DNA of 64,000 bases from NCBI RefSeq assembly GCF_011386835.1, contig NC_088807.1, positions 25,854,001 through 25,918,000 of the forward strand, given 5' to 3'. Source of the stretch: Chrysemys picta bellii (Eukaryota). The position numbers and the translations under genes are program-made. This document shows, in pieces, positions 12,213 to 64,000 of the stretch. The number at the start of each line of letters is the position of its first letter. The first letter of the stretch is position 1. The notes under the pieces are model-generated. The model did not search any database and was not told the origin of the DNA. It saw nothing but the letters and a program-made list of their open reading frames with translations.

Positions 12213-16667
<4,455 letters not shown>

Positions 16668-30096: not shown

Positions 30097-32065
<1,969 letters not shown>

Positions 32066-38292: not shown

Positions 38293-38343
38293 GTTGCTAG
38301 GCAACTGGGCCCCGGTTGCCAGGGCGCCTGCCCGGCCTGCCAG
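38293..38343 (+). promoter_or_regulatory. CDK20: RFX X-box and putative CDK20 non-coding exon 1
   Basis: GTTGCTAGGCAAC (38293-38305), half-site GTTGCCAGGG (38315), donor CAG|GTACTG at 38343/38344. Confidence 0.65.
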
Positions 38344-38369
38344 GTACTGGGGCTGTGGGGGGAGAGGGC

Positions 38370-38970: not shown

Positions 38971-39163
38971 GCATTGCAGGTGCCCCGCATTGGGGTTCCC
39001 TCAGTGTAAGGGGTGAGGAGCAGGGTATTATGGGCCAGGGCATCTCCCCCACCCCACCCCCGATATACCACAATGCCGAGTGCCCCTTTTGGGGGTGGGG
39101 GGCCGCTAACAGGATGTGAATTATTCTCTCCCACAGGTCCCAGTGCAAACCAGTCAGCCCAGC

Positions 39164-44286: not shown

Positions 44287-46069
44287 GGGTGAAGATGGGA
44301 CACGGGGCCTGTCCCCTCTGGGGGGCGCCGGCTCCCACCCGGCCCCAGGGCAGGGACTGGCTGCCTCAGGGGGGCAGGGAATGGGGCAGGGGCCTGTCTT
44401 CTCTAGGGGGCGCCGGCTCCCACCCGGCCCCAGGGCGGGAACTGGCTGGCTCAGGGGGCGGGGAACGGGGCAGGGGCCTGTCCCCTCTGGGGGGCGCTGG
44501 CTCTGATCCAGCCCTGTGGAGGGTGAAGATTGGCCCCAGTCCCCTATATAGTCCCTGTAATAGGGACCCCCAGTCTGTCCGTCCCCCCAACATCTCCCCC
44601 TCTGGTTCCTGGTGCTCTCTGGACTCTGGTGTCACTGAGTTTTGTAATTAAACGGCTTTCGTTTACTGTGAACTGACTCCCGGCCCCTTTCCAGGAATTG
44701 CCCCACCCCCTGGTCTGGTTCTGTATGTGGGAGCCAGAACTCCTGGGTTCTCACCCACCTCTGTGAGGGAAGCGGGGGCCGGTGGGTTAGAGCTGGGTGG
44801 TCTGGGAGCCCGGACGCCTGGGTTCTCTCCCTGGCTCTGGGAGGGGAGTGGGGTGTAGTGGTTAGAGCAGTGGGGGCTGGGAGCCCGGACTCCTGGTTTC
44901 TATACCCGGCTCTGGCAGAGGACTGGGGGCTAGTGGGTTAGAGTTGGGGGGCTGGGAGCCAGGACTCCTGGGTTCTCTCCCGGCTCTGGGAGGGGAGTGG
45001 GGTCTAGTGGTTAGAGCAGGGGGGCTGGGAGCCAGGACTCCTGGGTCCAGTCTTTGGCTCTGCCTCACTTGCCCGTTCTCCCGGCAGTGACAGGCGGGTG
45101 ACAGCCGCCCAGCCTGAGCCGGGAGATAGCGCTATCTCTGTCGCCATGTGCCCGCCTCTGGGCTGTGCTGGCGTTGCTGGGGGGGTGGGGGGCACAAGAG
45201 CCCTCACTTTCCTGCCCTGCTCTGGCCTCGTCTCCCTCCGTTCCTGCTCCTTGGCCTGTCCTGCTCTCGCGCGCTTTCATTCTTCATGTCTCTTTCACGT
45301 CTTCCTTCCTCTCGCACGTGTCTCCCTTCCTTCAGTCACTGTCAGGCCCTGTCTTTCGCTGTCCCGCTCTCCGCCTGTCACCCTCGTTCTGTCTTTCATT
45401 AGCACCTTCTCCCGCCCGTCTGCAGTGTGATCTCTCTCCATCGTTCATTAGCACCCTCTGGGTGACGGCCCATTGCGCCAGGCGCTGTACAGTGTCTATT
45501 AGGTGTATTACGGTACCTCCTAGGCACCCCAGCCATGGCCCAGGACCCACCGCGCCGGGCGCTGTACAAACATGTAACAGAAAGACAATCCCTGCGCCCG
45601 CAGAGCTTCCCGTCTGAGACGAGACCCGGGGCGGGTCCAGACTGGGTACCGCAAGGGAACAACGAGTCCCTATTGCAGCCAGCTCCACGCCACGGTAGCC
45701 TTCCCCTCGCCTAGGTTTTTTCCCGAGGCATCACGGCAAAGGAGGCGGAGAACGGGGGGCTGTGCGCCCGAGCCCGAAGATGCTCAGTGGGGAGAGACAC
45801 CAGCGGACGATGGAGGCTGGAGGCGGGGGCAGGAGTGGAGATCCGGATAGCGACGGGGCTAGATCGGCTGCCGGAGACCTTATACAGTCCTAGATTCCTC
45901 GCCACGAAGAGTCGCTGCTTCGCAGGGCAGAGCCCCCAAGCTCAGCACGGCCAGCGTTCTTGTTCCTACCGGGATACGTGCACATTTAGCCATACTAAGC
46001 CCCACATGATTTGCTTATGCCCGGGTTCCCAGGCAGTCCAGGTGGCTCGGTACCTCTGACCTGCCCCCC

Positions 46070-46960
46070 TGCATTATTTACCCACCATTTTTAAGCCATC
46101 TGCAAACTTTATCAGGGATGATTTTATATTTTCTTCCAGGGCATTGATCAAAATGCCTGTCGGAGAACTGATTCCAGGGGACCCCACTGGAAACAGACCC
46201 ACTCGGGGATCATTCCCCGCTTACAGTTACATTCCGAGATCTATCAGTTAGCCAGTTTTTAAGGCATTTAATGTGGGTTGTGTTAATGTTACACTGTGTG
46301 AATTTTTAATCAGTGTCACGCGGGACCAGGTCAAACGCCTCAGCGAAGTCTGCCTGTTACATCAACGCTGCCATCTTTAGCAACCAAACGTGTAATCTCG
46401 TCAAAAAAAGATACTAAGTTAGTTTGACCGCATCTATTTTCCGTAAACCCCTGTTGATTGGCATTAATTATGTTACTCTCTTTTAATTCTTCATTAATTG
46501 AGTCCTGTATCAGCCGCTCCATTATCTTGCCCAGGATGGATGTCAGGCTGACAGGTCTATAATTACCCAGATCATCTCGTTCACCCTTTTTCAAAAATTG
46601 GCACCTTGGTTTATTGCAGATTTATTACACATTGACCTTCCCCCAGTGCTCCAAGTAACAGTACTGCCAGCTCCTCGGCCAGCTCTCTTCAAACTCTTGG
46701 ATTGAAGGTCTCTGGGCCTGATGATGTAAAAATGTCTGACTTTAGTAGCGTCCTCCAGAGGCACTATTGGAATGGAAAAAGTGTTGTCATCACTCGTCCG
46801 AGTGGGTTTTTTTACGCAGAACAGAAATATTTATTGACCGTGTCTGCCTGTTCTGTGCTAGTATTGGTAAGTCTACCATGTGCATCAAGGAATGGACTAA
46901 TACCATTCTTGGGATCCTTTGTGTTCCTCATGTGGTTAAAAAAACCTCCTTCTCATTGTC
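46070..46960 (-). mobile_element. Degenerate CR1 ORF2 (reverse transcriptase) fragment
   Basis: Minus ORF KKGERDDLGNYRPVSLTSILGKIMERLI...QGFTENRCGQTNLVSFFDEIT, with upstream SGP..FNPRV..ELAEEL remnants. Confidence 0.85.
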
Positions 46961-47964
46961 CAAACAGCTTATGTTTGATGTGCCAGAGAAGGGGGCGTCA
47001 GTGTGGGGCTGCAAGGGTTGGAAATGGCACTAGATCCGTTCATGGCGGATAGGTCCATCAGTGGCTATTGGCCAGGGCTGCTACCCCATGCTCTGGGGGT
47101 CCCTAAACCTCTGCCTGCCAGGAGCTGGGACTGGGCGATGGGATGGGTCACTCTTCGTTCCCTCCGAAGCACCTGGTGTTGGCTGCTGTCGGCAGACAGG
47201 ACCCCGGGCTAGCGATTGGACTGACCCAGCGTGGCTGTTCTTCTCTTCTTAGGGGCAACGTGGACAGAGAAACGGGCTCAGAGGAGGATCTCGGCGGGGG
47301 GGCCCCCATTCTGGACAAGATCGCACGGACAATGCGGTGGGGTGAGGAGAGCGGTCGGCTGGCTGAATGGAGAGGAAAAGCTAGAACTTGAGGACGTCGG
47401 GCGGCAACCACAAGATTTGCACGGAGTCCGCACGTGGGAGGGAGGCCCGCGTCGATGGCAACAGGCAAGCTGGGTTGGGTGGCGGGGGAGGCGAGGAGCT
47501 GCCTAGACAGCCAGGAGAGGGCCGGATTTTAGCTTGGCGAGGTCGATCCGGGAGTGGAGGCGGGAGTTGGACCCGGGTTTGTGGGGGGGAGAAGGTGCAA
47601 ATGGAGAAGAGAACGACCGAGCCCTGGGGAGCCAGAAAAGGGTGGAGTCAGGGAAGCCGAGATCCCCAGAAAAGGAGCCAGGAGGGTGGAAACTCCTCCC
47701 TTCGAGTGATCTTTCAGTCATTGTGTCGTCCTTCAGTGCACCCTCTGTTCCCCGAGCAGAATCTTTCCTTCTCTCTCACCCTTGCTAGCTCAGACCCGTG
47801 CAGAGCTCGGTAAGCTGCAGAATTGTTCCCCTGTCAATAAGGAAATAAAACAATCTAGGAAAGGCCAGGCAAAGAGCTTAGTTACATTTTAAAAAAGAAA
47901 TGAGGACATGCCAGATAGTTTAAGGTTTCCGCAGTAAACTTTGATTGTGAGATCGGGGTCTGGT

Positions 47965-48225
47965 CATTCCGGGCGCTGCCCACACCCCGCCCGCGATCAG
48001 GGCCCCCCCGTCGGGCCGGGCGCTGCCCACACCCCGCCCGCGATCAGGGCCCCCCCCGTCGGGCCGGGCGCTGCCCACACCCCGCCCGTGATCAGGGCCC
48101 CCCCGTCGGGCCGGGCGCTGCCCACACCCCGCCCGCGATCAGGGCCCCCCCGTCGGGCCGGGCGCTGCCCACACCCCGCCCGCGAACAGGGCCCCCCCGT
48201 CGGGCCGGGTGCTGCCCACACCCCA
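47965..48225. repeat. 47-bp CpG-rich minisatellite (~5.5 copies)
   Basis: CCCACACCCCGCCCGCGATCAGGGCCCCCCCGTCGGGCCGGGCGCTG units. Confidence 0.9.
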
Positions 48226-49349
48226 ACCGATCAAGGACTGGCTTGGTTCGGATGTATAAACCCCTTCCCAGGGAGAGAATCCCAGGTACTAACGAGGTTA
48301 TTAATCTCCCTGCGAAAGGCAGGAGCCCAGCTGAAACGCAGCCCCAACATTTCCCGGCGCGGGTAATGAGCCTTTGGAACAAACCGCCCAGGGACGTGGT
48401 GGATTCCCCAACTCCCGTGGGGTCAGATCCGGGCCGGATCCTTTCCGGAAGGGGCTTTAGCCAAGTCCGTGGGCTTGGTGCGGAGGACCCTCGGTGAAAT
48501 TCACTAGCCTGGGCTATTCGGGAAGTCGGTCTAGATGGACTAAGGGGCTTTTCTAGCCAGTCTCGTGGTTCGTGGCAAGTTCACTGCACCCCCAGGGGCT
48601 CTGTGCCCCCCTCCATCCCCCCACCCCCTCTAATTCACAGACTCCCTCTAATCCTCTAAGCTGAGTGCCCCCCCATCTCCCCAGAGCAGGGTCCCCCGTT
48701 CTCCCCCCCCATTTCCACCACCCTTCTCTGAGGGGTCAGTCGTTCCAGGGGTCCCCAGGTTATGCTTCCTTGGGGAGCTGGCCTAGAGACGGGGTCACTT
48801 TCTGCCTCATGCCCCGGGGGCTCTTTCATCTCCACTCAATGGCCAAGGTGCTAAAATTGGGGCTGTGCTGACCGGATGCCAGGTGGGGGCTCCCCGTGTA
48901 TCCCCCCATTTTCTAATGTCCTCCCCCTCCCCAAATCCACAGACTCCTGCCCGCCGGTGCCCGGAGCGTCCCCAGGAAATTTGGAAAGGATTGGCCGTGG
49001 CATCCGGAAGTTGTCGCCTGATGTGTGGGTGGAGATGCACCGGGACAACCAGGGGCGAGATTAGAATCATCCGGGAGCTGAGCTCCGTCTCGGGGAAAGA
49101 GGGTGAGTGCACGGAGACTCTCCGCTACTGGGTAGCAGTATAGGAAGCATGACACGCAGAGGAGTTTTCAGAGCCTCTCCTCTCCAGCAGGGGGCATTAG
49201 GGTCCCCCCAGCCTGGTCCATTACAATCTTATTACAACAAGCCTTATGTTATGAACCTGCTGCGCTTAATGTAGGTCCTACTGTATTTACTAACCTAATG
49301 ACACCGATCTCTGCTTGATGCTCAAGGATCTATAGTGCTGAGAGAGCTG

Positions 49350-50125
49350 TCCCAGGGCTGGAATTGCAGGGGCTGCTGGTGGGGTGTGAGGGGCACCGCG
49401 GGGCTGTTGGAGGGTGGGGAGGGCACCGCGGGGCTGGGTTGGAGGGTGGGGAGGGCAGGGGCTGCGGGTCGGGAGTGAGGGGCACCACGGGGATGGGTTG
49501 CAGGGTGGGGAGGGCAGGGGCTGCGGGTGGGGAGTGAGGGGCACCGCGGGGCTGTTGGAGGGTGGGGAGGGCAGGGCTGCGGGTGGGGAGTGAGGGGCAC
49601 CGCGGGGCTGGGTTGGAGGGTGGGGAGGGCAGGGGCTGCGGGTCGGGAGTGAGGGGCACCACGGGGATGGGTTGCAGGGTGGGGAGGGCAGGGGCTGCGG
49701 GTCAGGAGTGAGGGGCACCGCGGGGCTGTTGGAGGGTGGGGAGGGCAGGGGCTGTGGGTCGGGAGTGAGGGGCACCGCGGGGCTGTTGGAGGGTGGGGAG
49801 GGCAGGGGCTGCGCGTGGGAGTGAGGGGCACCGCGGGGCTGTTGGAGGGTGGGGAGGGCAGGGCTGCGGGTCGGGAGTGAGGGGCACCACGGGACTGTTG
49901 GAAGGTGGGGAGGGCAGGGGCTGCGGGTCGGGAGTGAGGGGCACCGCTGGGCTGGGTTGGAGGGTGGGGAGGGCAGGGGCTGCGGGTCGGGAGTGAGGGG
50001 CACCACGGGGCTGTTGGAGGGTGGGGAGGGCAGGGGCTGCGGGTGGGGAGTGAGGGGCACCGTGGGGCTGTTGGAGGGTGGGGAGGGCAGGGGCTGCGGG
50101 TGGGGAGTGAGGGGCACCGTGGGGC
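49350..50125. repeat. ~56-bp G-rich minisatellite upstream of the GATA1 regulatory region
   Basis: GAGGGTGGGGAGGGCAGGGGCTGCGGGTCGGGAGTGAGGGGCACC units. Confidence 0.9.
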
Positions 50126-50168
50126 TGGGTTTGGACTCATCTCTCTCTCTTGCTCAGCTCCTTCCCCT

Positions 50169-50189
50169 TTATCTGGCGCTGGGAGATAA
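50169..50189. promoter_or_regulatory. GATA1: Paired GATA sites, candidate GATA1 upstream enhancer
   Basis: TTATCT (50169-50174) and AGATAA (50184-50189); another CTATCA near 50306. Confidence 0.45.
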
Positions 50190-50839
50190 GCGGGTGTTTT
50201 TCAGAGAATCGGTCGCTGGCTTCCCCTGAAGTCTGGGTTAGACTCACCCCCCCGCCTGTGCGCAGGGCCAGGGGGTTCATCCTGACACAGAATCTGCATC
50301 AGTTTCTATCAGCCAGTGTCGCAGGGACGCCCCCAGCTACAGCCGCAGTGGGGTCTAGTGGTTAGAGCAGGGGGGCTGGGGGCCAGGACTCCTGGGTTCT
50401 GTCCCCGGCTCTGGGAGGGGAGTGGGGGCTGGTGGTTAGAGCAGGGGGCCAGGACTCCTGGGTTCTCTCCCGGCTCTGGGAGGGGAGTGGGATCTGGTGG
50501 GTTAGAGCGGGGAGGAGGGTTGGGAGCCAGGACTCCTGGGTTCTCTCCCCGGCTCTGGGAGGGGAGTGGGGTCTAGCGGTTAGAGGGGGGGGGCGGGCTG
50601 GGAGCCAGGACTCCTGGGTTCTTTCCCCGGCTCTGGAACACTAGCAGAGGGAGGGGAGTGAACAGGCCAGGAAGACTGTGGCCCTCGCACCCCAGACGCA
50701 GTGGGGGACCTGGGACGTCTCCCCCACCCAGGTCTGTTATTCCCCACCTTGCCCCCTGCGCTGCCCGCCCAGCACTATGGCGTGGGTTGTTCCAGGCCCC
50801 GTCACCAAGAATCCGCCAACCGCCAGCTCCTGACCCTGG

Positions 50840-50858
50840 CATCAGATAAGGGCTTATC
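50840..50858 (+). promoter_or_regulatory. GATA1: GATA1 promoter double-GATA (GATApal) element
   Basis: CATCAGATAAGGGCTTATC matches the ATC(A/T)GATAAG palindromic site plus a nearby TTATC, as known from mouse, human and chicken GATA1 promoters. Confidence 0.7.
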
Positions 50859-51799
50859 GGGGACTTCCAGGCCTGCTGCCATCACCTCCCCAGGCCCCAA
50901 ACTGGCCGGGCGGTTAGTGGGGCAGGGAATGGGGCTGGGGCCTGTCTCCTCTGGGGGGCACCGGGTCTCATCCGGCCCAGGGCAGGGCCTGGCTGGCTCG
51001 GGGAGGGCGGGGAATGGGGCAGGGGCCTGTCCCCTCTGGGGGGCACCGGGTCTCATCCGGCCCCAGGGCAGGGACTGGCTGGCTCAGGGGGTGGGGAGTG
51101 GGGCTGGGGCCTGTCCCCTCTGGGGGGGCACCGGGTCTCATCCGGCCTCAGGGCAGGGACTGGCTGGCTCGGGGAGGGCGGGGAATGGGGCACAGGGCCT
51201 GTCCCCTCTGGGGGGCGCCATCTGCGATCTGCCCCACGTGTGAAATCTCTAGGAATGCTGAGTGATGATAGACCAGTTGCCGTCCCCCCCATGTATCCAT
51301 CGCTGCCTCCCCTCCCCCTGGACGAGCGTGGGGGTACAGCACCAAGACCCCAAAACTCCCAACCCTCCCTCCAATGTTTACTTGCCTCCTCCCACTGAGC
51401 CAGGCAGAGAATAGGGCGTCCTGCCTCCCAGCGCCCCCCCCCCCCACCCCGCCCCCTAAGGCCCAGTCTCCTCCCAGAGAACCCAGGAGTCCTGGCTTCC
51501 AGCCCCTCCCCTCTACCCAATAGACCCCCACTTCCCTCCGAGACAACCCAGGAGTTCTGGCTCCCCCCTCCCGCCCCCCGAACCACTAGACCCATCTCCT
51601 TCTACACTAGAGAGAGTTTGGGGGGCTGGTTGTCTCTCCCTCTGCTGCACATTGGGGGGTAATTGAGTTCTCCAGGGTGGGGGGCAGGAGACCCCCAGCT
51701 GCTCTCTCCCTCCCCCTCTGTGCCCCACGAGAGCCCGTCCCGTCTCAGAAGGCGGGACCTCACCAGCCTGGGCTGCTGTGTCATTTTTAGCGTCTCTGC

Positions 51800-51970
51800 C
51801 CCCCCCCCCTCCTGTTCTCTGTCTCTCGGAGCCACCCAGCAAGTTGGGGCGGACCCACGGCCGGCTAGATCTGGGGAGCTCGCTGTGCTTCAAACCCCCC
51901 CTCGAAATTTGCCAAGGGTCCACCTGGCACCGCATGTGGGGGCCCCCCCAAATTTCTTGCCCAGCTCTAG
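51800..51970 (+). other. GATA1: Putative GATA1 non-coding exon 1 (5' boundary uncertain)
   Basis: Consensus donor CTAG|GTGAGT at 51970/51971, about 1.1 kb downstream of the double-GATA element. Confidence 0.5.
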
Positions 51971-52084
51971 GTGAGTGTCAAGCCGAGGCCGGCGGGGGAC
52001 GGGTGGCGTCCGGTTTGGGGGAGTTGTGGAGAGAGGCCAACGGGCAGAGCGAATCGGGACGGGATGGAAGGGTGCAGAGGAACT

Positions 52085-52750
52085 GCAAACGGAGGGCTGG
52101 CGCGGGCGCCAGGGGCAGTGGGAACGGAGGAGGGCTGGCGGGGGGGGCCAAGGGGCACTGGGAACAGAGGGGGGCTGGCGCGGGCGCCAGGGGGCACTGG
52201 GAACGGAGGGGGGCTGGCGGGGGGGGCAGAGGGCATTAGGAACAGAGGGCTGGCGGGGGTGCTGGGGACATTGGGAATGGGGGGCTGGTGTGGGGTGCCA
52301 GGGGGTACTGGGAATGGAGGAGGGCTGGTGCGGGGTGCCAGGGGGCACTGGGAACAGAGGGGGGCTGGCATGGGCGCCAGGGGGCACTGGGAATGGAGGG
52401 AGCTGGTGGGGGGGTGCCAGGGGGCACTGGGAACGGAGGAGGGCTGGCAGGGGTGCCAGGGGGCACTGGAATGGAGGGGGGCTGGCGGGGTTTCCAGGGG
52501 GCACTGGGAATGGAGGGCTGGCGGGGAGGGCCAGGGGGCACTGGGAACGGAGGAGGGCTGGTGCGGGGGGCCAGGGGGCACTGGGAACGGAGGAGGGCTG
52601 GCGGGGGTGCCAGGGGCACTGGGAACAGGGGGCACAGGGGGTGCCAGGGGGCACAGGAGGGTGGTGGTGGGGCAGATGGCGGGGTGGAGGTGCCAGGGGG
52701 CACAGGAGGGTGAGGGGGGCGGATGGCGGGGTGGGGGTGCCAGGGGGCAC
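52085..52750. repeat. ~38-bp G-rich minisatellite in GATA1 intron 1
   Basis: GGGGGCACTGGGAACGGAGGAGGGCTGGCGGGGGGGCCA units. Confidence 0.85.
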
Positions 52751-53280
52751 GGGGGGGAGATGGGTGGATAGGGCGTGGGGGATGGCAGGGTGTGGTGGGG
52801 GGACGGATGGCGGGGTGGGGGAGCAGGGCAGACGGACGGATCGCACTAGGAAAAGGGGTGAGAAGACTGGCAGGTCCCAGCGGGTCCGTTGCAGGTTAAT
52901 GTCGGGGTTCCCACCCCCCGTTTGAGTTCCCCCCGGCTGGTCGTGCGGGGATCGGGGGGGAACCCTTGTCTGGAAACGTCCAGTCCGGGGGGGGGGGGGG
53001 AGACCACCCCCATCTCGAGACATTTCTCTTCCCCCCCCCCCCCGACCCCACTCCTCTGCGCAATACCCAGAGGATCAGCAATTTACCTTCCGTTCTCTCC
53101 TCTCAGCCTCCCGGACGCCTGGGTTCTTTCGAAGCCTTCGCGAGGTAAATCGTGGGGGGGGGCAAGGGGATGTCGTCCCCGTTCTGGGGTGGGTGGGGGG
53201 TTACAATACACATTGTTCTACCCACTGAGCCGCATCGGGGCAAATCTGTGACTGCCGTGTGAGCTGCCCGTCAAGGCAAG

Positions 53281-53334
53281 GGAGATAAAAATTATCTCCT
53301 GGCTATTTCTTATCTGAGGCCCTAATCCCGATAA
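53281..53334. promoter_or_regulatory. GATA1: Intronic cluster of four GATA motifs including a perfect palindrome
   Basis: GGAGATAA-AAA-TTATCTCC (53281-53299), TTATCT (53310-53315), CGATAA (53329-53334); CACCC box near 53392. Confidence 0.65.
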
Positions 53335-54425
53335 GGGCTGTATAATCGTTGGGCCCCACACGTCCGATTTCCTCCCCTCCGGCCTGGTACACACCCACAC
53401 AACGCAGAGATCGGGGGCAGGGGCCATCCTGGAGCTGGATGTGAAAATGGCCCAAGGAGATGGAAGTGGGGGTGATGGGGGGGGTGCGCAGGGGGAGTTT
53501 GGAGTGTGTCTGTCATGGGGGGTGGGTTTTGGGTTGTGGTGGTGTGTCTGTCTTTGCGGCGGTGTCGAGGGGTTGTGTGTGTGTCTTTGGGTGGAGTTTT
53601 TGTCGCATTCAGGGTGCGTGCCTTTGGTTGCACATTCGGGTTGTGGTGCTGTGCGTCTGTCTTTGCGGTGGTGTTGAGGGTGTTTCCCCATGGGTTGTGT
53701 GTGTGTGTGGCTGTGTTTTTGTAGTGTTCAGGGGGTTTGGGTTGTGATGGTGGTTGGGTTGTTTGTCTTTGTAGTGGTGGGGAGAGGATGTCCCCTTGGG
53801 TTGTGTGTCTTTGTGTGTCTGTCTCCGGGATGTGGTGGGGTGTGTGTTTGGGTTGTGTGTCTTTGCAGTGGTGTTGAGGGGTGTCTCTCTCTGGGTTGTG
53901 TCTCTTTGTGTGGGACTGGGCTGTGTTTTTGTAGTACTGAAGGTGCATCTGTGTGTTTTTGTGTGTGTTGTTTATGCTGTGTGTGGTTTGGGCTGTGGTG
54001 GTGGGGCCGGGGAGGGTGCGCTGTTTGGGACTGCCTGTGCGGTGTGTTTCATGTGGCGGGCGATAGTTTCGGTGGCTGTGACTTGATGTGTTGTTTGTGT
54101 TGATTTGGCATGTCTGTGTGGGCTGTTGTGGTTGTTTGGTGGGTGTGTATGTCTTAGCTGTTTGTGTGGCAGGGATTTGTGTTGGCTTGTTAGCTTGTGT
54201 GTGTCGTATCCGTGGGTTAGCAGCGTGTTGTGGCTGGGTGGGGGGCTTTTTTGGGATGTATTTCTCTGCGTGTGTTGTCCGACATGTGAGTCTGTTGTTC
54301 TGGGGGTGCTGAGTGTTGGCTTTGTGGGGTGTTTGTGTGTTTTTCTAGGGTGTGGTATTTTGGAGAGTGCTTGTGTGTCGCGGAGGGAGTTGTGATTTGG
54401 TCTGGATTTCTTTGCCTGTCTTTGT

Positions 54426-54468
<43 letters not shown>

Positions 54469-54789
54469 ATCCCTGATGCCCCTGCTGGCGAGGCTGAGCT
54501 CTGCTGGGTGTGTGTCCTCGTGGTCTGGGATTGTGCGTTGTTTCGGGGCAGTGGTTTGTGTGTGTGTTGATCATGGTGGGGTGGCACCGTGGGGATGGTT
54601 AAGTAGCGGCAAAGGGGGTGCATTTGTGCGGTGAGGGGGGGCTGGGAGTGTGTGTTCGGTGGTGGTGGCAGGGCTGGTGTTGAATTGTGATTTACGAATG
54701 GACAGGAGATTAAAAGAGCAACAAAATTCACAACGTGAGAAGAACAGGGCACAGAGTGGGGTGGGGAAATACACCCCCTGACCGACCTT

Positions 54790-55540
54790 TATGTAGAGCC
54801 CGGGAGAGAACCCAGGCGACCTGGCTCCCAGCCCCCCGTTCTAACCCCAGTCGACCCCCTCCCCTCCCAGAGCTGGAGAGAACCCAGGCGACCTGGCTCC
54901 CAGCCCCCCGTTCTAACCCCAGTCGACCCCCTCCCCTCCCAGAGCCGGAGAGAACCCAGGCGACCTGGCTCCCAGCCCCCTGCTCTAACCCCAGTCGACC
55001 CCCTCCCAGAGCCGGAGAGAACCCAGGCGACCTGGCTCCCAGCCCCCCTGCTCTAACCCCAGTCGACCCCCCTCCCCTCCCAGAGCTGGAGAGAACCCAG
55101 GCGACCTGGCTCCCAGCCCCCCTGCTCTAACCCCAGTCGACCCCCTCCCCTCCCAGAGCCGGAGAGAACCCAGGCGACCTGGCTCCCAGCCCCCCTGCTC
55201 TAACCCCAGTCGACCCCCCTCCCCTCCCAGAGCCGGAGAGAACCCAGGCGACCTGGCTCCCAGCCCCCCCGCTCTAACCCCAGTCGACCCCCTCCCCTCC
55301 CAGAGCCGGAGAGAACCCAGGCGACCTGGCTCCCAGCCCCCCTGCTCTAACCCCAGTCGACCCCCCTCCCCTCCCAGAGCCGGAGAGAACCCAGGCGACT
55401 TGGCTCCCAGCCCCCCGTTCTAACCCCAGTCGACCCCCTCCCCTCCCAGAGCCGGAGAGAACCCAGGCGACCTGGCTCCCAGCCCCCCATTCTAACCCCA
55501 GTCGACCCCCTCCCCTCCCAGAGCCGGAGAGAACCCAGGC
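54790..55540. repeat. Locally homogenised GTCGAC-bearing variant of the ~63-bp repeat (mirror copy 62520-62990)
   Basis: 10 GTCGAC units on the left; 6 units (one GTTGAC) on the right. Confidence 0.9.
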
Positions 55541-56199
55541 TCCCTGCCCCCCTCCATTGTGGGGTGGTTAGTTCGCTGCCCCCGCCCCGTGTTATCTGCC
55601 CCATCTCTGCTGCGTTGGCAGGGATGAGGCAAGGGCAGCTTTTGAAATCAGTTTTGAGATGGTGCCGACTTCCTCTGCACTGCGCCACCCTCTTCCCCCG
55701 CCCCTGCAGCCAGGACTCCTGGGTTCAGTCCCTGGGGAGGGGAGGGGAGGGAAGGGGAGTGGGGGGGCAGGACTCCTGGGTTCAGTCCCTGCGGAGGGGA
55801 GTGGGTGGGGGCAGGACTCCTGGGTTCAGTCCCTGCGGAGGGGAGGGGAGTGGGGGGGCAGGACTCCTGGGTTCAGTCCCTGGGGAGAGGAGTGGGGGGG
55901 CAGGACTCCTGGGTTCACAGCGGGGCCAGGCCCTGGTGGCCGCTGGGGGTCTGCGTGCGAGATCGGGGGGCGGATAGAGCCGGGAGGAAAGGGGCCTCCC
56001 CGGCCGGGCTGGAGGCACCACTTCTGAGAAGGAGAGATGGGGGGAGATAGACAGAGAGATGCAGAGATTGGTCGGGGCAGGGGCAGCGCCTTCCGGGGTA
56101 ACCCTCCTTGGCCATATATAGGGGTGGGGTCCCCGGGCCTGGCTGGCTGGCTGGAGGCAGAGGTGGGGATGGGGAAACAAGGGGGGTGGAGGGGATGGA

Positions 56200-57720
56200 G
56201 GGCTAGGTAGGGAGGGGTGTGGATGGGGGATGGATGGGGCGTGTAGGAAAGGAGGGAGGGATGAGCATGGAGGGAGGGGCTGGAGGGATGAAGGGGAGGC
56301 GGATGGAGGGAGGGAGGGGGGGCGTTCAGGGAGGGATGGAGGGCCATGTAGGAAAGGAGGGAGGGAGGGAGGGGTGGGATGGATGGGGAGGATGGAGGGA
56401 GGCATGGATGGGGGGTGTGGGGGCTGGATGGAGGAATGCAGGGATGGAGGGGGGTGTGGGGGCTGGATGGAGGGGGGCTGGATGCAGGGAGGGAGGGATG
56501 GAGGGCCATGTAGGAAAGGAGGAGAGAGGGGTGGGATGGATGGGGAGGATGGAGGGGGGTGTGGGGGCTGGATGGAGGGATGCAAGGAGGGAGGGATGAA
56601 GGGGAGGTGGAGGGAGGAAGGGGGGGCGTTCAGGGAGGATGGAGGGCCATGTAGGAAAGGAGGGAGGGAGGGGTGGGATGGATGGGGAGGATGGAGGGAG
56701 GGATGGGGGGGGGGGGTGGGGGCTGGATGGAGGGATGCAGGAGGGATGGAGGGCCATGTAGGAAAGGAGGGAGGAAGGGGTGGGATGGATGGGGAGGATG
56801 GAGGGAGGGATGGAGGGGGGTGTGGGGGCTGGAGGGAGGGAGGGCCATGTAGGAAAGGAGGGAGGAAGGGGTGGGATGGATGGGGAGGATGGAGGGAGGG
56901 ATGGAGGGGGGTGTGGGGGCTGGAGGGAGGGAGGGCCATGTAGGAAAGGAGGGAGGAAGGGGTGGGATGGATGGGGAGGATGGAGGGAGGGATGGAGGGG
57001 GGTGTGGGGGCTGGATGGAGGGATGCAGGGAGGGAGGGATGAAGGGGAGGTGGAGGGAGGAAGGGGGGGCGTTCAGGGAGGGATGGAGGGCCATGTAGGA
57101 AAGGAGGGAGGAAGGGGTGGGATGGATGGGGAGGATGGAGGGAGGGATGGAGGGGGGTGTGGGGGCTGGATGGAGGGATGCAGGGAGGGATGGAGGGCCA
57201 TGTAGGAAAGGAGGGAGGAAGGGGTGGGATGGATGGGGAGGATGGAGGGAGGGATGGAGGGGGGTGTGGGGGCTGGAGGGAGGGAGGCCATGTAGGAAAG
57301 GAGGGAGGAAGGGGTGGGATGGATGGGGAGGATGGAGGGAGGGATGGAGGGGGGTGTGGGGGCTGGAGGGAGGGAGGGCCATGTAGGAAAGGAGGGAGGA
57401 AGGGGTGGGATGGATGGGGAGGATGGAGGGAGGGATGGAGGGGGGTGTGGGGGCTGGAGGGAGGGAGGGCCATGTAGGAAAGGAGGGAGGAAGGGGTGGG
57501 ATGGATGGGGAGGATGGAGGGAGGGATGGAGGGGGGTGTGGGGGCTGGATGGAGGGATGCAGGGAGGGAGGGATGAAGGGGAGGTGGAGGGAGGAAGGGG
57601 GGGCGTTCAGGGAGGGATGGAGGGCCATGTAGGAAAGGAGGGAGGGAGGGGTGGGATGGATGGGGAGGATGGAGGGAGGGATGGATGGGGGGTGTGGGGG
57701 CTGGATGGAGGGAGGGATGG
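56200..57720. repeat. Polypurine (GGA/GGGA-rich) ~90-bp minisatellite in GATA1 intron 1 (mirror copy 60650-61860)
   Basis: GGAGGGCCATGTAGGAAAGGAGGGAGGAAGGGGTGGGATGGATGGGGAGGATGG... units. Confidence 0.9.
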
Positions 57721-58466
57721 GGGTATGGAGGTGTGGGGGGTGAAGGGAGGGGGGCCATGCAGGGAGGGAAGGGTGAGCTCAGGCATCGGGGGAGGGACAG
57801 ACCCATTGTTTTCAGTCCCATAAGCCCCACGTTTCCCCTCGTGGCCCCAGGGCCTCTCGCTCCGCCCTGGCCCGGTCCTTGTGCTCGTGCCCTCGGTCCG
57901 GCCGGGGCTCCCCTGCGTCTCTCAGTGCCCCCCGAACCTGGGGCCGGGCGGGTGGGTTTCGTCCCCAGCCCCTGCCGTGGTGAGAATGGTGACCTGGCTG
58001 GTGCGTGCACGGCCCTGCCCTCGAGATGCCAACCGGTAACGCTGTATAAACCGTTCGCCTGGCAAAACACGGCAGCCAGCGGCCTCCCCCCGACCTGGCC
58101 CAATTCGCACGTGGAATCGGTGCGTTTGCACGCTAACGAACAGCCGTTTTCACACGTGGCCTCTCTCAAGAACGGGCTTCTCCCCCCCGGGAACGTGTCC
58201 TTGACGGTCCGGGGGGAGGGCCGGCCGCTCGCGGTCGCTGGGGGAGACCGACCGGCGTTGCCTCCTCTTTAAACTTTGCTTTGCTCTTGGCTGCGTCTCT
58301 AACTACCAGACCTCACTCCCCTCCCCAAGACAGGGGTGGAACCCAGGAGTCCTGGCTCCCCTCCACTCCCCTCCCGGAGCCAGGGAGAGAACCCAGGAGT
58401 CCTGACACCCTGTGTCTTGTCCCTCATGTAAATTCCCCATCTAGGTCAGGAGCTCTTGTGCCTGGG

Positions 58467-58639
58467 ATGGATTTTGCCACCTTGGGGGGGCAGGAGATGA
58501 CCCCCCATTTCCTGGAGCCCCCCCTCCTGCCGCCGGCCGATGAATCCGCGGTCTTCTTCCACGGAGCCGAGGGCGGGGACCCCCGGGGCCCTCGCTACCT
58601 ACTTCTCCCGGACACCGGAGTCCTACCGCAGCACGCCGG
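58467..58639 (+). CDS. GATA1: GATA1 first coding exon (exon 2), left copy, with a +1 insertion in a C-run
   Basis: Acceptor at 58444/58445, 22-nt UTR, MDFATLGGQEMTPHFLEPPLLPPADESAVFFHGAEGGD..., phase-1 donor CCG G|GTAGGT. It resembles human MEFPGLG...ESGVFFPSGPEG...LAYYRDAEAYRHSP; Xp11.23 synteny and upstream GATA elements support the call. One extra base at about 58580-58584. Confidence 0.8.
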
Positions 58640-58887
58640 GTAGGTTGCCAGAGCCCGCCCGCCCACCGCAGGGCTCCTCGGAGGGGCATCGCCTGGGGCT
58701 ACCCACAGAGGGCACCGTTACCGCGGGCTGTGTGGTTGCCACGGCTACTGGGGCCACGGTTGCGTGGCTGCCTGTGGTGTCCCCAGGGCTCCTGTGGGGA
58801 GGGAGTGGGCATGGCCTGCCGCCTGCCTGGTTGGCATGGCAACAGTGCCATTGCTATCCCATTGTGTGGGGTTGTCGTGGTCGCCGT

Positions 58888-59387
58888 NNNNNNNNNNNNN
58901 NNNNNNNNNNNNNNNNNNNNNNNNNNNNNNNNNNNNNNNNNNNNNNNNNNNNNNNNNNNNNNNNNNNNNNNNNNNNNNNNNNNNNNNNNNNNNNNNNNNN
59001 NNNNNNNNNNNNNNNNNNNNNNNNNNNNNNNNNNNNNNNNNNNNNNNNNNNNNNNNNNNNNNNNNNNNNNNNNNNNNNNNNNNNNNNNNNNNNNNNNNNN
59101 NNNNNNNNNNNNNNNNNNNNNNNNNNNNNNNNNNNNNNNNNNNNNNNNNNNNNNNNNNNNNNNNNNNNNNNNNNNNNNNNNNNNNNNNNNNNNNNNNNNN
59201 NNNNNNNNNNNNNNNNNNNNNNNNNNNNNNNNNNNNNNNNNNNNNNNNNNNNNNNNNNNNNNNNNNNNNNNNNNNNNNNNNNNNNNNNNNNNNNNNNNNN
59301 NNNNNNNNNNNNNNNNNNNNNNNNNNNNNNNNNNNNNNNNNNNNNNNNNNNNNNNNNNNNNNNNNNNNNNNNNNNNNNNNNNNNNNN
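58888..59387. other. Scaffold gap (500 N)
   Basis: Exactly 500 N. Confidence 0.99.
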
Positions 59388-59760
59388 GAAGGAACCCACA
59401 GCTGCCACGGGGACACAAAACCCGTCGCCATGGCGAGGCCGGGGCCACGGCAACCATGGGATGAGGCCATGGGGAACCACGGCAGGAGAAACCCCGACAA
59501 GGGGCGGGCACCACGACGACCACGACAACCCCACACAATGGGATAGCAATGGCACTGTTGCCATGCCAACCAGGCAGGCGGCAGGCCATGCCCACTCCCT
59601 CCCCACAGGAGCCCTGGGGACACCACAGGCAGCCACGCAACCGTGGCCCCAGTAGCCGTGGCAACCACACAACCCACGGTAACGGTGCCCTCTGTGGGTG
59701 GCCCCAGGCGATGCCCCTCCGAGGAGCCCTGCGGTGGGCGGGCGGGCTCTGGCCACCTAC

Positions 59761-59932
59761 CCGGCGTGCTGCGGTAGGACTCCGGTGTCCGGGAGAAGTA
59801 GGTAGCGAGGGCCCCAGGGTCCCCGCCCTCGGCTCCGTGGAAGAAGACTGCAGATTCATCGGCCGGCGGCAGGAGGGGGGGCTCCAGGAAATGGGGGGTC
59901 ATCTCCTGCCCCCCCAAGGTGGCAAAATCCAT
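59761..59932 (-). CDS. GATA1: GATA1 first coding exon (exon 2), right inverted copy, intact frame
   Basis: 172 nt = MDFATLGG...GDPGALATYFSRTPESYRSTP + G; acceptor at 59955/59954, donor GT at 59760-59759. Confidence 0.82.
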
Positions 59933-62900
59933 CCCAGGCACAAGAGCTCCTGACCTAGATGGGGAATTTACATGAGGGACAAGACACAGGGTGTCAGGAC
60001 TCCTGGGTTCTCTCCCTGGCTCCAGGAGGGGAGTGGAGGGGAGCCAGGACTCCTGGGTTCCACCCCTGTCTTGGGGAGGGGAGTGAGGTCTGGTGGTTAG
60101 AGACGCAGCCAAGAGCAAAGCAAAGTTTAAAGAGGAGGCAACGCCGGTCGGTCTCCCCCAGCGACCGCGAGCGGCCGGCCCTCCCCCCGGACCATCAAGG
60201 ACACGTTCCCGGGGGGGAGAAGCCCGTTCTTGAGAGAGGCCACGTGTGAAAACGGCTGTTCGTTAGCGTGCAAACGCACCGATTCCATGTGCGAATTGGG
60301 CCAGGTCGGGGGGAGGCCGCTGGCTGCCGTGTTTTGCCAGGCGAACGGTTTATACAGCGTTACCGGTTGGCATCTCGAGGGCAGGGCCGTGCACGCACCA
60401 GCCAGGTCACCATTCTCACCACGGCAGGGGCTGGGGGACGAAACCCACCCGCCCGGCCCCAGGTTCGGGGGGCACTGAGAGACGCAGGGGAGCCCCGGCC
60501 GGACCGAGGGCACGAGCACAAGGACCGGGCCAGGGCGGAGCGAGAGGCCCTGGGGCCACGAGGGGAAACGTGGGGCTTATGGGACTGAAAACAATGGGTC
60601 TGTCCCTCTCCCGATGCCTGAGCTCACCCTTCCCTCCCTGCATGGCCCCCCTCCCTTCACCCCCCACACCTCCATACCCCCATCCCTCCCTCCATCCAGC
60701 CCCCACACCCCCCATCCATGCCTCCCTCCATCCTCCCCATCCATCCCACCCCTTCCTCCCTCCTTTCCTACATGGCCCTCCATCCCTCCCTGCATCCCTC
60801 CATCCAGCCCCCACACCCCCCATCCATCCCTCCCTCCATCCTCCCCATCCATCCCACCCCTCCCTCCCTCCTTTCCTACATGGCCCTCCATCCCTCCCTG
60901 AACGCCCCCCCCCTTCCTCCCTCCACCTCCCCTTCATCCCTCCCTCCATCCAGCCCCCACACCCCCCTCCATCCCACCCCTCCCTCCCTCCTTTCCTACA
61001 TGGCCCTCCATCCCTCCCTGCATCCCTGCATCCCTCCATCCAGCCCCCACACCCCCCATCCCTCCCTCCCTCCATCCTCCCCACCCATCCCACCCCTCCC
61101 CCCCTCCTTTCCTACATGGCCCTCCATCCCTCCCTGCATCCCTCCATCCAGCCCCCACACCCCCCATCCATCCCTCCCTCCATCCTCCCCATCCATCCCT
61201 CCTTTCCTACATGGCCCTCCATCCCTCCCTGCATCCCTCCATCCAGCCCCCACACCCCCCTCCATCCCTCCCTCCATCCTCCCCATCCATCCCACCCCTT
61301 CCTCCCTCCTTTCCTACATGGCCCTCCCTCCCTCCAGCCCCCACACCCCCCTCCATCCCTCCCTCCATCCTCCCCATCCATCCCACCCCTCCCTCCCTCC
61401 TTTCCTACATGGCCCTCCATCCCTCCCTGAACGCCCCCCCTTCCTCCCTCCACCTCCCCTTCATCCCTCCCTCCTTGCATCCCTCCATCCAGCCCCCACA
61501 CCCCCCTCCATCCTCCCCATCCATCCCACCCCTCTCTCCCTCCTTTCCTACATGGCCCTCCATCCCTCCCTCCCTGCATCCAGCCCCCCTCCATCCAGCC
61601 CCCACACACCCCTCCATCCCTGCATTCCTCCATCCAGCCCCCACACCCCCCATCCATGCCTCCCTCCATCCTCCCCATCCATCCCACCCCTCCCTCCCTC
61701 CCTCCTTTCCTACATGGCCCTCCATCCCTCCCTGAACGCCCCCCCTCCCTCCCTCCCTCCGCCTCCCCTTCATCCCTCCAGCCCCTCCCTCCATGCTCAT
61801 CCCTCCCTCCTTTCCTACACGCCCCATCCATCCCCCATCCACACCCCTCCCTACCTAGCCCTCCATCCCCTCCACCCCCCTTGTTTCCCCATCCCCACCT
61901 CTGCCTCCAGCCAGCCAGCCAGGCCCGGGGACCCCACCCCTATATATGGCCAAGGGAGGGTTACCCCGGAAGGCGCTGCCCCTGCCCCGACCAATCTCTG
62001 CATCTCTCTGTCTATCTCCCCCCATCTCTCCTTCTCAGAAGTGGTGCCTCCAGCCCGGCCGGGGAGGCCCCTTTCCTCCCGGCCCTATCCGCCCCCCGAT
62101 CTCGCACGCAGCCCCCCAGCGGCCGCCAGGGCCTGGCCCCGCTGTGAACCCAGGAGTCCTGCCCCCCCACTCCCCTCCCCAGGGACTGAACCCAGGAGTC
62201 CTGCCCCCCCACTCCCCTCCCCTCCGCAGGGACTGAACCCAGGAGTCCTGCCCCCACCCACTCCCCTCCGCAGGGACTGAACCCAGGAGTCCTGCCCCCC
62301 CACTCCCCTTCCCTCCCCTCCCCTCCCCAGGGACTGAACCCAGGAGTCCTGGCTGCAGGGGCGGGGGGAAGAGGGTGGCGCAGTGCAGAGGAAGTCGGCA
62401 CCATCTCAAAACTGATTTCAAAAGCTGCCCTTGCCTCATCCCTGCCAACGCAGCAGAGATGGGGCAGATAACACGGGGCGGGGGCAGCGAACTAACCACC
62501 CCACAATGGAGGGGGGCAGGGAGCCTGGGTTCTCTCCAGCTCTGGGAGGGGAGGGGGTCGACTGGGGTTAGAACGGGGGGCTGGGAGCCAGGTCGCCTGG
62601 GTTCTCTCCGGCTCTGGGAGGGGAGGGGGTCGACTGGGGTTAGAACGGGGGGCTGGGAGCCAGGTCGCCTGGGTTCTCTCCGGCTCTGGGAGGGGAGGGG
62701 GGTCGACTGGGGTTAGAGCAGGGGGGCTGGGAGCCAGGTCGCCTGGGTTCTCTCCGGCTCTGGGAGGGGAGGGGGGTCGACTGGGGTTAGAGCAGGGGGG
62801 CTGGGAGCCAGGTCGCCTGGGTTCTCTCCGGCTCTGGGAGGGGAGGGGGTCGACTGGGGTTAGAGCAGGGGGGCTGGGAGCCAGGTCGCCTGGGTTCTCT

Positions 62901-64000
62901 CCGGCTCTGGGAGGGGAGGGGGTTGACTGGGGTTAGAGCAGGGGGCTGGGAGCCAGGTCGCCTGGGTTCTCTCCCGGGCTCTACATAAAGGTCGGTCAGG
63001 GGGTGTATTTCCCCACCCCACTCTGTGCCCTGTTCTTCTCACGTTGTGAATTTTGTTGCTCTTTTAATCTCCTGTCCATTCGTAAATCACAATTCAACCC
63101 AGCCCTGCCACCACCACCGAACACACACTCCCAGCCCCCCCTCACCGCACAAATGCACCCCCTTCGCCGCTACTTAACCATCCCCACGGTGCCACCCCAC
63201 CATGATCAACACACACACAAACCACTGCCCCGAAACAACGCACAATCCCAGACCACGAGGACACACACCCAGCAGAGCTCAGCCTCGCCAGCAGGGGCAT
63301 CAGGGACGGACACGGACACACACACACACACACACACTCTACAAAGACAGGCAAAGAAATCCAGACTAAATCACAACTCCCTCCGCGACACACAAGCACT
63401 CTCCAAAATACCACACCCTAGAAAAACACACAAACACCCCACAAAGCCAACACTCAGCACCCCCAGAACAACAGACTCACATGTCGGACAACACACGCAG
63501 AGAAATACATCCCAAAAAAGCCCCCCCACCCAGCCACAACACGCTGCTAACCCACGGATACGGCACACACAAGCTAACAAGCCAACACAAACCCCTGCCA
63601 CACAAACAGCTAAGACATACACACCCACCAAACAACCACAACAGCCCACACAGACATGCCAAATCAACACAAACAACACATCAAGTCACAGCCACCGAAA
63701 CTATCGCCCGCCACATGAAACACACCGCACAGGCAGTCCCAAACAGCGCACCCTCCCCCGGCCCCCCCACCACAGCCCAAACCACACACAGCATAAACAA
63801 CACACACAAAAACACACAGATGCACCTTCAGTACTACAAAAACACAGCCCAGTCCCACACAAAGAGACACAACCCAGAAAGAGACACCCCTCAACACCAC
63901 TGCAAAGACACACAACCCAAACACACACCCCACCACATCCCGGAGACAGACACACAAAGACACACAACCCAAGGGGACATCCTCTCCCCACCACTACAAA

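What the first reader, a model, noticed from the sequence alone, without database searches (positions are those of the whole stretch)
53768..64000. GATA1 5' region present twice as an inverted repeat converging on a scaffold gap; zinc-finger exons missing
Both arms carry intron 1 and exon 2 and stop within about 125 bp of each other in intron 2 (about 250 and 375 bp past the donor). They differ by substitutions and VNTR lengths (10 versus 6 GTCGAC units, different (GT)n and polypurine arrays). Symmetry about a placeholder gap best fits two haplotypes joined in opposite orientation, with both contigs failing at the same hard sequence. A true palindrome or a duplicated GATA1 in an X-homologous block is the more exciting alternative and cannot be excluded from sequence alone.
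Basis: partly seen in the sequence, partly recalled or inferred. Interest (0 to 1): 0.72.

Follow-up and report, generated by a model that had tools for sequence, protein, structure and literature searches.

The report
False GATA1 palindrome from retained haplotig
The mirror-image pair of GATA1 gene starts is almost certainly the two parental copies of one turtle locus that the assembler stitched head to head across a placeholder gap, so it is an assembly error and not a gene duplication.

Summary
53768-58887 and 59513-64000 are reverse complements around a 500-N gap, with 0.9% substitutions and different VNTR, (GT)n and purine-array lengths. Each arm ends in intron 2 of GATA1, and the window holds no zinc-finger exon.

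The finding's start is only window truncation. The left arm lies on a 40.8-kb contig (18088-58887) bounded by two 500-N gaps, and earlier notes place mirrored landmarks up to 15 kb beyond the window end.

The haplotype reading is supported.
- One probable source sample (X2) carries a mosaic of left- and right-arm letters.
- Two other individuals (X1, X6) carry only left-arm letters.
- A fourth (X4) carries a third haplotype.
So the arm differences are segregating alleles, not paralogue differences.

Two other turtles have the locus once, in one orientation. Window contig 1 plus the right contig reproduce the Chelonia order CDK20-GATA1-HDAC6-WDR45-PFKFB1, which leaves the left contig redundant.

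Every 1-nt indel between the arms, including an apparent frameshift in left exon 2, is a homopolymer error of the left contig.

Read depth could not be tested, because only contigs were served. The scan has noted similar gap-centred inverted duplicates elsewhere in this genome. Verdict: assembly artefact, low interest.

The parts
18088..58887 (+). Left contig, bounded by two 500-N gaps. It carries SLC35A2, PQBP1 (-), TIMM17B, CDK20 and the GATA1 5' part. This is the redundant haplotig, and its last 5.1 kb is the finding's left arm.
   Evidence: N runs. Gene fragments. Collinear with Platysternon L001 15433-68564 in one orientation.
53768..58887 (+). Left arm as visible inside the window.
58888..59387 (.). 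500-N scaffold gap. Both flanks are GATA1 intron 2 pointing into it, so they are not continuous.
59388..64000 (-). Right arm: the start of the contig that continues beyond the window with CDK20 and TIMM17B in the orientation expected from the window's first contig. It reaches 125 nt further into intron 2 (59388-59512) than the left arm.
58467..58639 (+). Left copy of the coding part of the GATA1 first coding exon (ATG to donor, 173 nt). It has one extra C in the run at about 58576-58580, which shifts the frame. The probable acceptor AG is at 58443-58444.
   Evidence: The extra base is absent from contigs of all four runs laid (table 8) and from both other turtles.
59761..59932 (-). Right copy of the same exon: 172 nt, which is 57 codons plus 1 base, with an intact frame. 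The donor GT is at 59760-59759.
   Evidence: The peptide matches GATA1 N-termini.
54803..55540 (.). 72-nt VNTR with GTCGAC, 10.2 copies. The right-arm partner at 62523-62974 has 6.2 copies. The unit derives from a very high-copy interspersed repeat.
   Evidence: Word depth of 800 to 55000 (table 2).
54429..54466 (.). (GT)19. The right-arm partner at about 63310-63337 is 10 nt shorter.
56251..57717 (.). GGAG-rich purine minisatellite in intron 1. The partner at 60683-61810 is about 340 nt shorter.
53283..53340 (+). Cluster of four GATA motifs, including an inverted pair. It lies just left of the finding's start and shows that the mirror symmetry continues there. All four GATA motifs are kept in Chelonia mydas.
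   Evidence: Mirror of note s1-329987. 92/101 identical to L002.
17588..18087 (.). Second 500-N gap. By turtle synteny HDAC6 should follow here, but the left contig follows instead.
1..17587 (.). First contig of the window: PFKFB1 (-) and WDR45 (+). It is collinear with Chelonia L002 50.5-60.5 kb in reverse.

Best explanation
This is a false heterotype duplication, meaning an allelic copy wrongly kept as a second locus. The sequenced turtle is heterozygous across the GC-rich, repeat-rich block SLC35A2-PQBP1-TIMM17B-CDK20-GATA1.

The assembler built each haplotype as its own contig. Both contigs broke in GATA1 intron 2, 125 nt apart, and the redundant one was not purged. The scaffolder then dropped that 40.8-kb contig (18088-58887) into the hole between the WDR45 contig and the GATA1-CDK20 contig, in reverse orientation, with 500-N placeholders on both sides. 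HDAC6 and the 3' exons of GATA1 are missing from that hole.

The result looks like a palindrome of the GATA1 5' region. The animal most likely has one GATA1 per haplotype, with zinc-finger exons that this part of the assembly does not contain.

Shown here: the repeat, its allelic nature in the population, the single-copy arrangement in two relatives, and the error profile of the left contig. Inferred: the order of events in assembly and scaffolding.
For: 1. The arm differences are alleles.
- Contigs of X2, the probable source sample, are a mosaic. They carry right-arm letters at 53889, 54002, 54175, 54204, 57791, 58111, 58584, 58646, 58700, 58724 and 58728, and left-arm letters at the other arm-differing sites they cover.
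- X1 (same organism label, another sample) and X6 (another label) carry left-arm letters at every covered arm-differing site. That is about 21 sites in X1 and about 15 in X6. The one exception is 58304, which lies inside a repeat with word depth above 30000.
- X4 has right-arm letters at 54175, 54611 and 58646, plus about 10 private differences.
- If both arms existed in every genome, a pure left pattern in two individuals would be very improbable.

2. The join is a 500-N placeholder, not sequence. The left arm lies on a 40.8-kb contig with gaps at both ends.

3. Relatives have one copy.
- Platysternon L001 is collinear with the whole left contig in one orientation, and the right arm maps to the same interval reversed.
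- Exon 2 occurs once in 79.5 kb of L001 and once in 60.9 kb of L002. L002 also has a 68-nt partial repeat of the exon's 3' end just downstream.
- In L001 the zinc-finger exons follow about 0.55 kb past the point where the right arm stops.

4. Synteny. Chelonia L002 reads CDK20, GATA1 exon 2, HDAC6, WDR45(-), PFKFB1(+). Window 1-17587 followed by the right contig gives that order reversed. The left contig is the piece that does not fit.

5. Consensus quality. At all 7 single-base indels between the arms, independent contigs have the right arm's length, including those of the pure left-type individuals (table 8). The left contig therefore has about one homopolymer error per 400 nt.

6. The signature matches published criteria for false duplications: a gap between the copies, elevated heterozygosity and more erroneous k-mers (PMC9516828).

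7. Unverified earlier notes list further gap-bounded inverted duplicates in this genome, and a second HDAC6-WDR45-PFKFB1 block in opposite orientation 78-92 kb upstream.
Against: - Read depth, the classical test, could not be measured. All 24 runs are served as contigs, and their word depths cannot be calibrated to copy number.
- Contigs drop minor variants, so 'pure left type' in X1 and X6 is inferred from the absence of right-type letters at low depth (about 5-14).
- A palindrome whose arms had been homogenised in those two individuals would look the same.
- I could not read the sequence beyond the window end. The extent of the mirror (at least 15 kb) rests on positions in unverified earlier notes that match my window.
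- The synteny argument assumes this species has the gene order of the two other turtles.
Confidence: 0.88

Rival explanations
1. This is a true inverted duplication (palindrome). A second, inverted copy of the TIMM17B-CDK20-GATA1 5' block lies downstream of an intact GATA1, and the rest of intron 2, exons 3 onward and perhaps HDAC6 form the spacer hidden in the gap.
For: The mirror symmetry is long and clean. The run X2 contains both variant sets. Depth was not testable, so four copies per diploid genome are not formally excluded.
Against: - Two individuals carry only left-type letters and one carries a third haplotype.
- The arms differ by 0.9% plus large VNTR differences, unlike arms homogenised by gene conversion.
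- No sequence joins the arms.
- Two other turtles have one copy.
- The left contig's outer end also meets a gap, and a neighbour (WDR45) that breaks turtle synteny.
Confidence: 0.06
2. This is a real but misplaced paralogue. The left contig belongs to a genuine second copy of the whole region, next to the HDAC6-WDR45-PFKFB1 block noted 78-92 kb upstream, as part of a large segmental duplication. The scaffolder merely put it in the wrong hole.
For: Earlier notes place a second HDAC6-WDR45-PFKFB1 block in the orientation that would continue the left contig. So every block of the region seems to be present exactly twice.
Against: 'Everything present twice' is also what two retained haplotypes give. 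The population evidence against fixed paralogue differences applies equally here. Similar gap-bounded duplicates are noted on other scaffolds of this genome, which points to a general assembly problem.
Confidence: 0.05

Closest known systems
False heterotype duplications in vertebrate assemblies (Ko et al. 2022, Genome Biol 23:205, PMC9516828; Rhie et al. 2021, VGP)
   Same: - Two divergent haplotypes of one locus are kept in one pseudo-haploid scaffold.
- The copies are separated by an assembly gap.
- The region is locally heterozygous, GC-rich and repeat-rich.
- One copy carries extra consensus errors.
- A gene is truncated and falsely doubled. The paper's NPNT / NPNT-like case is of the same kind.
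   Different: Here the copies are inverted rather than adjacent in tandem, which mimics a palindrome. Half depth and discordant linked reads, two of the paper's criteria, could not be checked.
Genuine large palindromes with gene pairs in their arms (for example ampliconic palindromes of mammalian sex chromosomes)
   Same: Long inverted arms carry genes head to head around a short centre, in a block homologous to mammalian Xp11.23.
   Different: By established knowledge, real palindromes have arms kept nearly identical by gene conversion, and they are found in every individual. Here the arms differ by 0.9% plus VNTRs, the centre is a placeholder, and other individuals carry only one arm's variants.
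GATA1 (erythroid transcription factor) locus of other turtles
   Same: The first coding exon is 91-95% identical in protein to the Chelonia and Platysternon models. Exon phase is the same. CDK20 and TIMM17B lie upstream, and the GATA-motif clusters are conserved.
   Different: In this assembly the zinc-finger exons and HDAC6 are absent from the locus. In Platysternon the finger exons follow within about 0.6 kb.

Membership tests
False heterotype (haplotig) duplication, criteria of PMC9516828 | Assembly gap or depth gap between the duplicated pair on one scaffold | tested here: met
   There is a 500-N gap at 58888-59387 between the arms, and a second 500-N gap at 17588-18087 at the other end of the left contig.
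False heterotype (haplotig) duplication, criteria of PMC9516828 | Copies differ by heterozygous, haplotype-specific variants: both are present in the source individual and they segregate in the population | tested here: met
   X2 contigs mix left and right letters. X1 and X6 are purely left type. X4 is a third haplotype.
False heterotype (haplotig) duplication, criteria of PMC9516828 | About half the diploid read depth on each copy | not testable with these tools
   All runs are served as Logan contigs, and the tool states that their depths are no copy number.
False heterotype (haplotig) duplication, criteria of PMC9516828 | Discordant linked or paired reads across the pair | not testable with these tools
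   No raw paired, linked or Hi-C reads were available.
False heterotype (haplotig) duplication, criteria of PMC9516828 | Excess of erroneous sequence in the duplicated copy | tested here: met
   At all 7 single-base indels between the arms, independent contigs have the right arm's length (against table 8). Both other turtles lack the left arm's extra C in exon 2.
True genomic palindrome | Arms joined by real sequence (a spacer or a direct junction) | tested here: not met
   Only a 500-N placeholder joins them. No contig laid on the left arm changed strand at its inner end. Contigs of all four runs run 259-981 letters straight past 58887.
True genomic palindrome | Both arms present in every individual | tested here: not met
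   X1 and X6 show no right-arm letters at about 21 and about 15 covered sites. The caveat is that contigs show presence better than absence.
GATA1 gene | First coding exon homologous to the GATA1 N-terminus, with the same exon phase | tested here: met
   A phmmer search of 1.84 billion proteins was run. Hits with a GATA zinc finger are named GATA binding protein 1 or erythroid transcription factor in tuatara, caecilian, platypus and echidna. The exon ends after codon position 1.
GATA1 gene | Two GATA-type zinc fingers | tested here: not met
   No C-x2-C...LWRR...C-N-A-C motif occurs in any frame of the window. These exons are missing from this part of the assembly, not shown to be missing from the animal.
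GATA1 gene | Conserved neighbourhood (Xp11.23-type block) | tested here: met
   SLC35A2, PQBP1, TIMM17B, WDR45 and PFKFB1 are in the window. The order CDK20-GATA1 is the same as in Chelonia and Platysternon.

The most novel reading that the evidence does not exclude
This turtle lineage really carries an inverted second copy of the TIMM17B-CDK20-GATA1 promoter/exon 1-2 block facing an intact GATA1. That would be a young palindrome in the block homologous to mammalian Xp11.23. It would be polymorphic or homogenised in some individuals, and the gap would hide the spacer.
Probability: 0.05. Interest if true: 0.5.

Novelty: not a real feature. Interest (0 to 1): 0.1.

Why it matters
It matters for use of this reference genome, not for biology. 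As it stands, annotation will report two truncated GATA1-like genes, one of them with a false frameshift. It will also report doubled CDK20, TIMM17B, PQBP1 and SLC35A2, and perhaps a 'lost' GATA1 DNA-binding domain and a lost HDAC6 at this locus. Gene-family counts, synteny maps and variant calls will be wrong here, because reads split between the copies.

The case also gives a practical recipe when raw reads are not available. Allele patterns in contigs of other individuals, plus gene order in relatives, can separate a haplotig from a paralogue.

Tried and rejected
- **Read depth and k-mer multiplicity.** All 24 runs found are served as contigs, so the depths could not be turned into copy number. 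Contig depths in X2 (20-56) were not consistently related to the number of allele-specific sites, so I did not use them.
- **Pfam on the exon 2 peptide.** No family matched. GATA1 N-termini have no Pfam model.
- **The word-index protein search.** I skipped it, because a 57-residue query can only retrieve proteins of 31-100 residues. I used the exhaustive search instead.
- **Non-GATA1 hits.** Two weak hits of that search (P0002, P0009) are unrelated low-complexity proteins, per Pfam.
- **Findings look-up beyond the window end.** I used the offsets given in the notes instead.
- **A real frameshift or pseudogene in the left exon 2.** Rejected, because all four runs and both relatives lack the extra C.
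- **Gap letters.** I did not look up or reconstruct the letters of either gap. The contigs that run past 58887 were counted but not read.
Full report
**Observation**

The window is GC-rich (58-72%) and holds two 500-N runs, at 17588-18087 and 58888-59387. A chain of inverted matches, 96-99% complementary, links 53768-58887 to 64000-59513. The outermost pair, 53768 and 64000, is cut by the window end, so the finding's start is not a biological boundary.

Outside tandem repeats, 2903 aligned bases carry 26 substitutions (0.90%): 22 transitions, 4 transversions and 11 in CpG context. They also carry 7 one-base indels in G/C or T runs. The tandem arrays differ between the arms:
- A 72-nt unit containing GTCGAC has 10.2 copies on the left and 6.2 on the right.
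- (GT)n is 10 nt longer on the left.
- A GGAG-rich minisatellite is about 340 nt longer on the left.

The right arm reaches 125 nt further toward the gap (59388-59512).

**What the arms carry**

Each arm ends with an exon that opens with ATG and closes with a GT donor after codon position 1. The left copy is 58467-58639 and the right copy is 59932-59761 on the minus strand.

I searched the 57-residue translation of the right copy by reference against 1.84 billion proteins. The hits were:

| Hit | Identity | Named as |
|---|---|---|
| Chelonia mydas chimeric model | 95% over residues 1-55 | Histone deacetylase 6 |
| Platysternon model with a GATA finger | 91% over residues 23-57 | anion exchange protein 2 |
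| Tuatara, aligned from residue 1 | 58% | GATA binding protein 1 |
| Caecilian, aligned from residue 1 | 57% | erythroid transcription factor |
| Lizard (Phrynocephalus) | 49% | hypothetical protein |
| Echidna representative (its cluster includes platypus) | 51% | erythroid transcription factor |

All of these except the Chelonia model carry Pfam GATA zinc fingers.

The window also holds PFKFB1, WDR45, SLC35A2, PQBP1, TIMM17B and CDK20, which is an Xp11.23-type neighbourhood. The exon is therefore the first coding exon of GATA1, and the genome is a turtle's. In non-coding DNA it is closer to Platysternon (about 86-91%) than to Chelonia (about 80-88%). No zinc-finger motif occurs in any frame of the window.

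**Continuity across the gap**

The two flanks are not continuous. Both are GATA1 intron 2 running into the gap from opposite sides, 248 and 373 nt past the donor. No frame crosses the gap.

**Extent of the mirror**

The left arm belongs to a 40.8-kb contig, 18088-58887, with a placeholder gap at each end. Earlier first-reader notes on the next window (unverified) give landmarks beyond my window's end. Their mirror positions in my window hold matching features:

| Note, offset beyond window end | Mirror feature in my window |
|---|---|
| Four-GATA cluster at +421 | 53283-53340 |
| Double-GATA/ETS palindrome at +2896 | 50843-50868 |
| CDK20 at +9544 to +15301 | 39161-44286 |
| ZNF143-like array at +14620 | Repeated units at about 38300-38900 |

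The symmetry therefore runs at least 15 kb beyond the finding's start.

**Alleles or paralogues**

All public runs that hold the stretch are kept as contigs. I laid four of them on 53000-58887.

- **X2.** Its sample has several runs, so it is probably the source of the assembly. It is a mosaic, with right-arm letters at 11 of the arm-differing sites and left-arm letters at the others it covers. That is what popped heterozygous bubbles give.
- **X1 and X6.** X1 has the same organism label as X2 but is another sample; X6 has a different label. Both show no right-arm letter at any covered arm-differing site, about 21 sites in X1 and about 15 in X6. The only exception is 58304, inside an interspersed repeat with word depth above 30000.
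- **X4.** It shares three right-arm letters and adds about ten private differences, so it is a third haplotype.

If both arms were present in every genome, X1 and X6 should be mosaics like X2. The arm differences therefore segregate as alleles, and their number (0.9%) is of the same order as the distance from the left arm to a third haplotype (about 0.4%).

**Consensus quality**

I compared spans with record lengths in table 8. Every contig that crosses one of the 7 one-base indels has the right arm's length, in three or four runs each, including the pure left-type individuals. Examples:
- 58383-58887 is 505 places for 504 letters in X1 and X2 (X6: 58381-58887, 507 places for 506 letters).
- 58425-58645 is 221 places for 220 letters in X4.
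- 57690-58360 is 671 places for 672 letters.
- 55854-56344 is 491 places for 492 letters.
- 54477-54832 is 356 places for 355 letters.

The exact positions of these gaps were not printed, but each stretch holds exactly one arm indel. The left contig therefore has roughly one homopolymer error per 400 nt.

One of those errors is the extra C at about 58576-58580, which makes left exon 2 look frameshifted. Both other turtles also lack that base. With it removed, the arm difference at 58584 is a synonymous CCC/CCT.

**Relatives**

The Platysternon locus L001 is collinear with the entire left contig in one orientation (18088-58887 to L001 15433-68564). The right arm maps to the same interval reversed. 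Exon 2 occurs once in L001. The two zinc-finger exons lie at L001 69253 and 70355, about 0.55 kb past the point that corresponds to the right arm's inner end. I did not carry any of those letters over to the gap.

The Chelonia locus L002 reads CDK20, GATA1 exon 2, HDAC6, a minus-strand gene at the WDR45 position, then PFKFB1. The window's first contig (1-17587) is collinear with L002 50.5-60.5 kb in reverse, and its end at 17587 abuts the HDAC6 3' end.

Contig 1 followed by the right contig therefore reproduces the turtle gene order, with HDAC6 and the GATA1 3' exons missing between them. The left contig is the extra piece and sits in the opposite orientation.

**Mechanism**

The individual is heterozygous in a GC-rich, minisatellite-rich region. 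Both haplotype contigs broke in GATA1 intron 2. The redundant contig escaped purging and was placed by the scaffolder into the hole next to its allelic partner, reversed. This step is inferred.

The signature fits the published description of false heterotype duplications: a gap between the copies, locally high heterozygosity and extra erroneous sequence (PMC9516828). Half depth and discordant linked reads, the remaining criteria, could not be tested here.

**Wider context (unverified notes)**

- HDAC6, WDR45 and the WDR45/PFKFB1 promoter array are also noted 92, 86 and 78 kb before the window start, in the opposite orientation to my contig 1.
- Several other inverted duplicates bounded by 500-N gaps are noted on this and other scaffolds of the genome, such as KDM5C, SKIV2L and ZBTB12-C2.

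This suggests that both haplotypes of the whole region were retained, and that the problem is general in this assembly.

**Rivals**

A true palindrome with GATA1's 3' part in the spacer, or a real segmental duplication with a misplaced contig, cannot be formally excluded without depth. Both conflict with the pure left-type individuals, the 0.9% arm divergence, the placeholder junction and the single copy in two relatives. Together I give them about 0.1.

**Verdict**

This is an assembly artefact of a known kind. It is of practical interest for curation and annotation of this reference: false GATA1 doubling and truncation, a false frameshift, and doubled neighbours. It is not of biological interest.

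Noticed in passing
window 58576-58580, and 54008, 54239, 54678, 55694, 56105, 57962: The left contig has single-base homopolymer length errors at every arm indel. One of them falsely frameshifts GATA1 exon 2. Independent contigs of four runs and two other turtles agree with the right arm.
   Followed up: yes
window 1-17587 and the gap at 17588-18087: The first contig (PFKFB1 minus, WDR45 plus) ends where HDAC6's 3' end follows in Chelonia mydas. In this scaffold the next piece is instead SLC35A2 in the wrong orientation, so HDAC6 and the GATA1 3' exons are missing from this part of the assembly.
   Followed up: partly
78-92 kb before the window start (earlier notes s1-318566, s1-318512, s1-318513): A second HDAC6-WDR45-PFKFB1 block lies in the opposite orientation to the copy in my window. 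It is probably the continuation of the left contig's haplotype. This would mean both haplotypes of a region of 150 kb or more are interleaved in the scaffold.
   Followed up: no
window 8555-10539, 27912-29539, 37881-38246, 42898-43688, 44728-45046, 50347-50636, 54795-55540, 62511-62982; also 58319-58405: There are many tandem arrays of a 72-75-nt unit built from one very high-copy interspersed repeat (core GAGAACCCAGGAGTCCTGGCTCCC). Word depths reach 5000-125000 in all four runs. These arrays differ in copy number between haplotypes and probably break contigs.
   Followed up: partly
proteins P0001 (EMP26342.1, Chelonia mydas 'HDAC6') and P0003 (TFJ98307.1, Platysternon 'anion exchange protein 2'): Both public gene models are chimeras. 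The Chelonia HDAC6 model starts with GATA1 exon 2 (residues 36-90). The Platysternon model is GATA1 with foreign upstream exons and a wrong name. GATA1 is poorly assembled or annotated in several turtle genomes.
   Followed up: partly
window 53283-53340, 50843-50868, 50169-50189: There are conserved GATA-motif clusters upstream of GATA1. The four-GATA cluster is 92/101 identical to Chelonia, and the double-GATA palindrome with an ETS-like site is 79/81 identical to Platysternon. These are likely autoregulatory elements.
   Followed up: partly
window 39161-44286, with L001 and L002: CDK20 lies between TIMM17B and GATA1 in three turtles, and GATA1 points away from TIMM17B. By my recollection, human has PCSK1N, ERAS and HDAC6 between TIMM17B and GATA1, with GATA1 in the opposite relative orientation.
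   Followed up: partly
window 58650-58887 and 59388-59512: GATA1 intron 2 near the contig ends is a degenerate repeat of GGTTGCCACGG / CCATGG-like motifs. This may be the start of the sequence at which both contigs failed. Short-read contigs of other individuals still run 259-981 letters past it.
   Followed up: no
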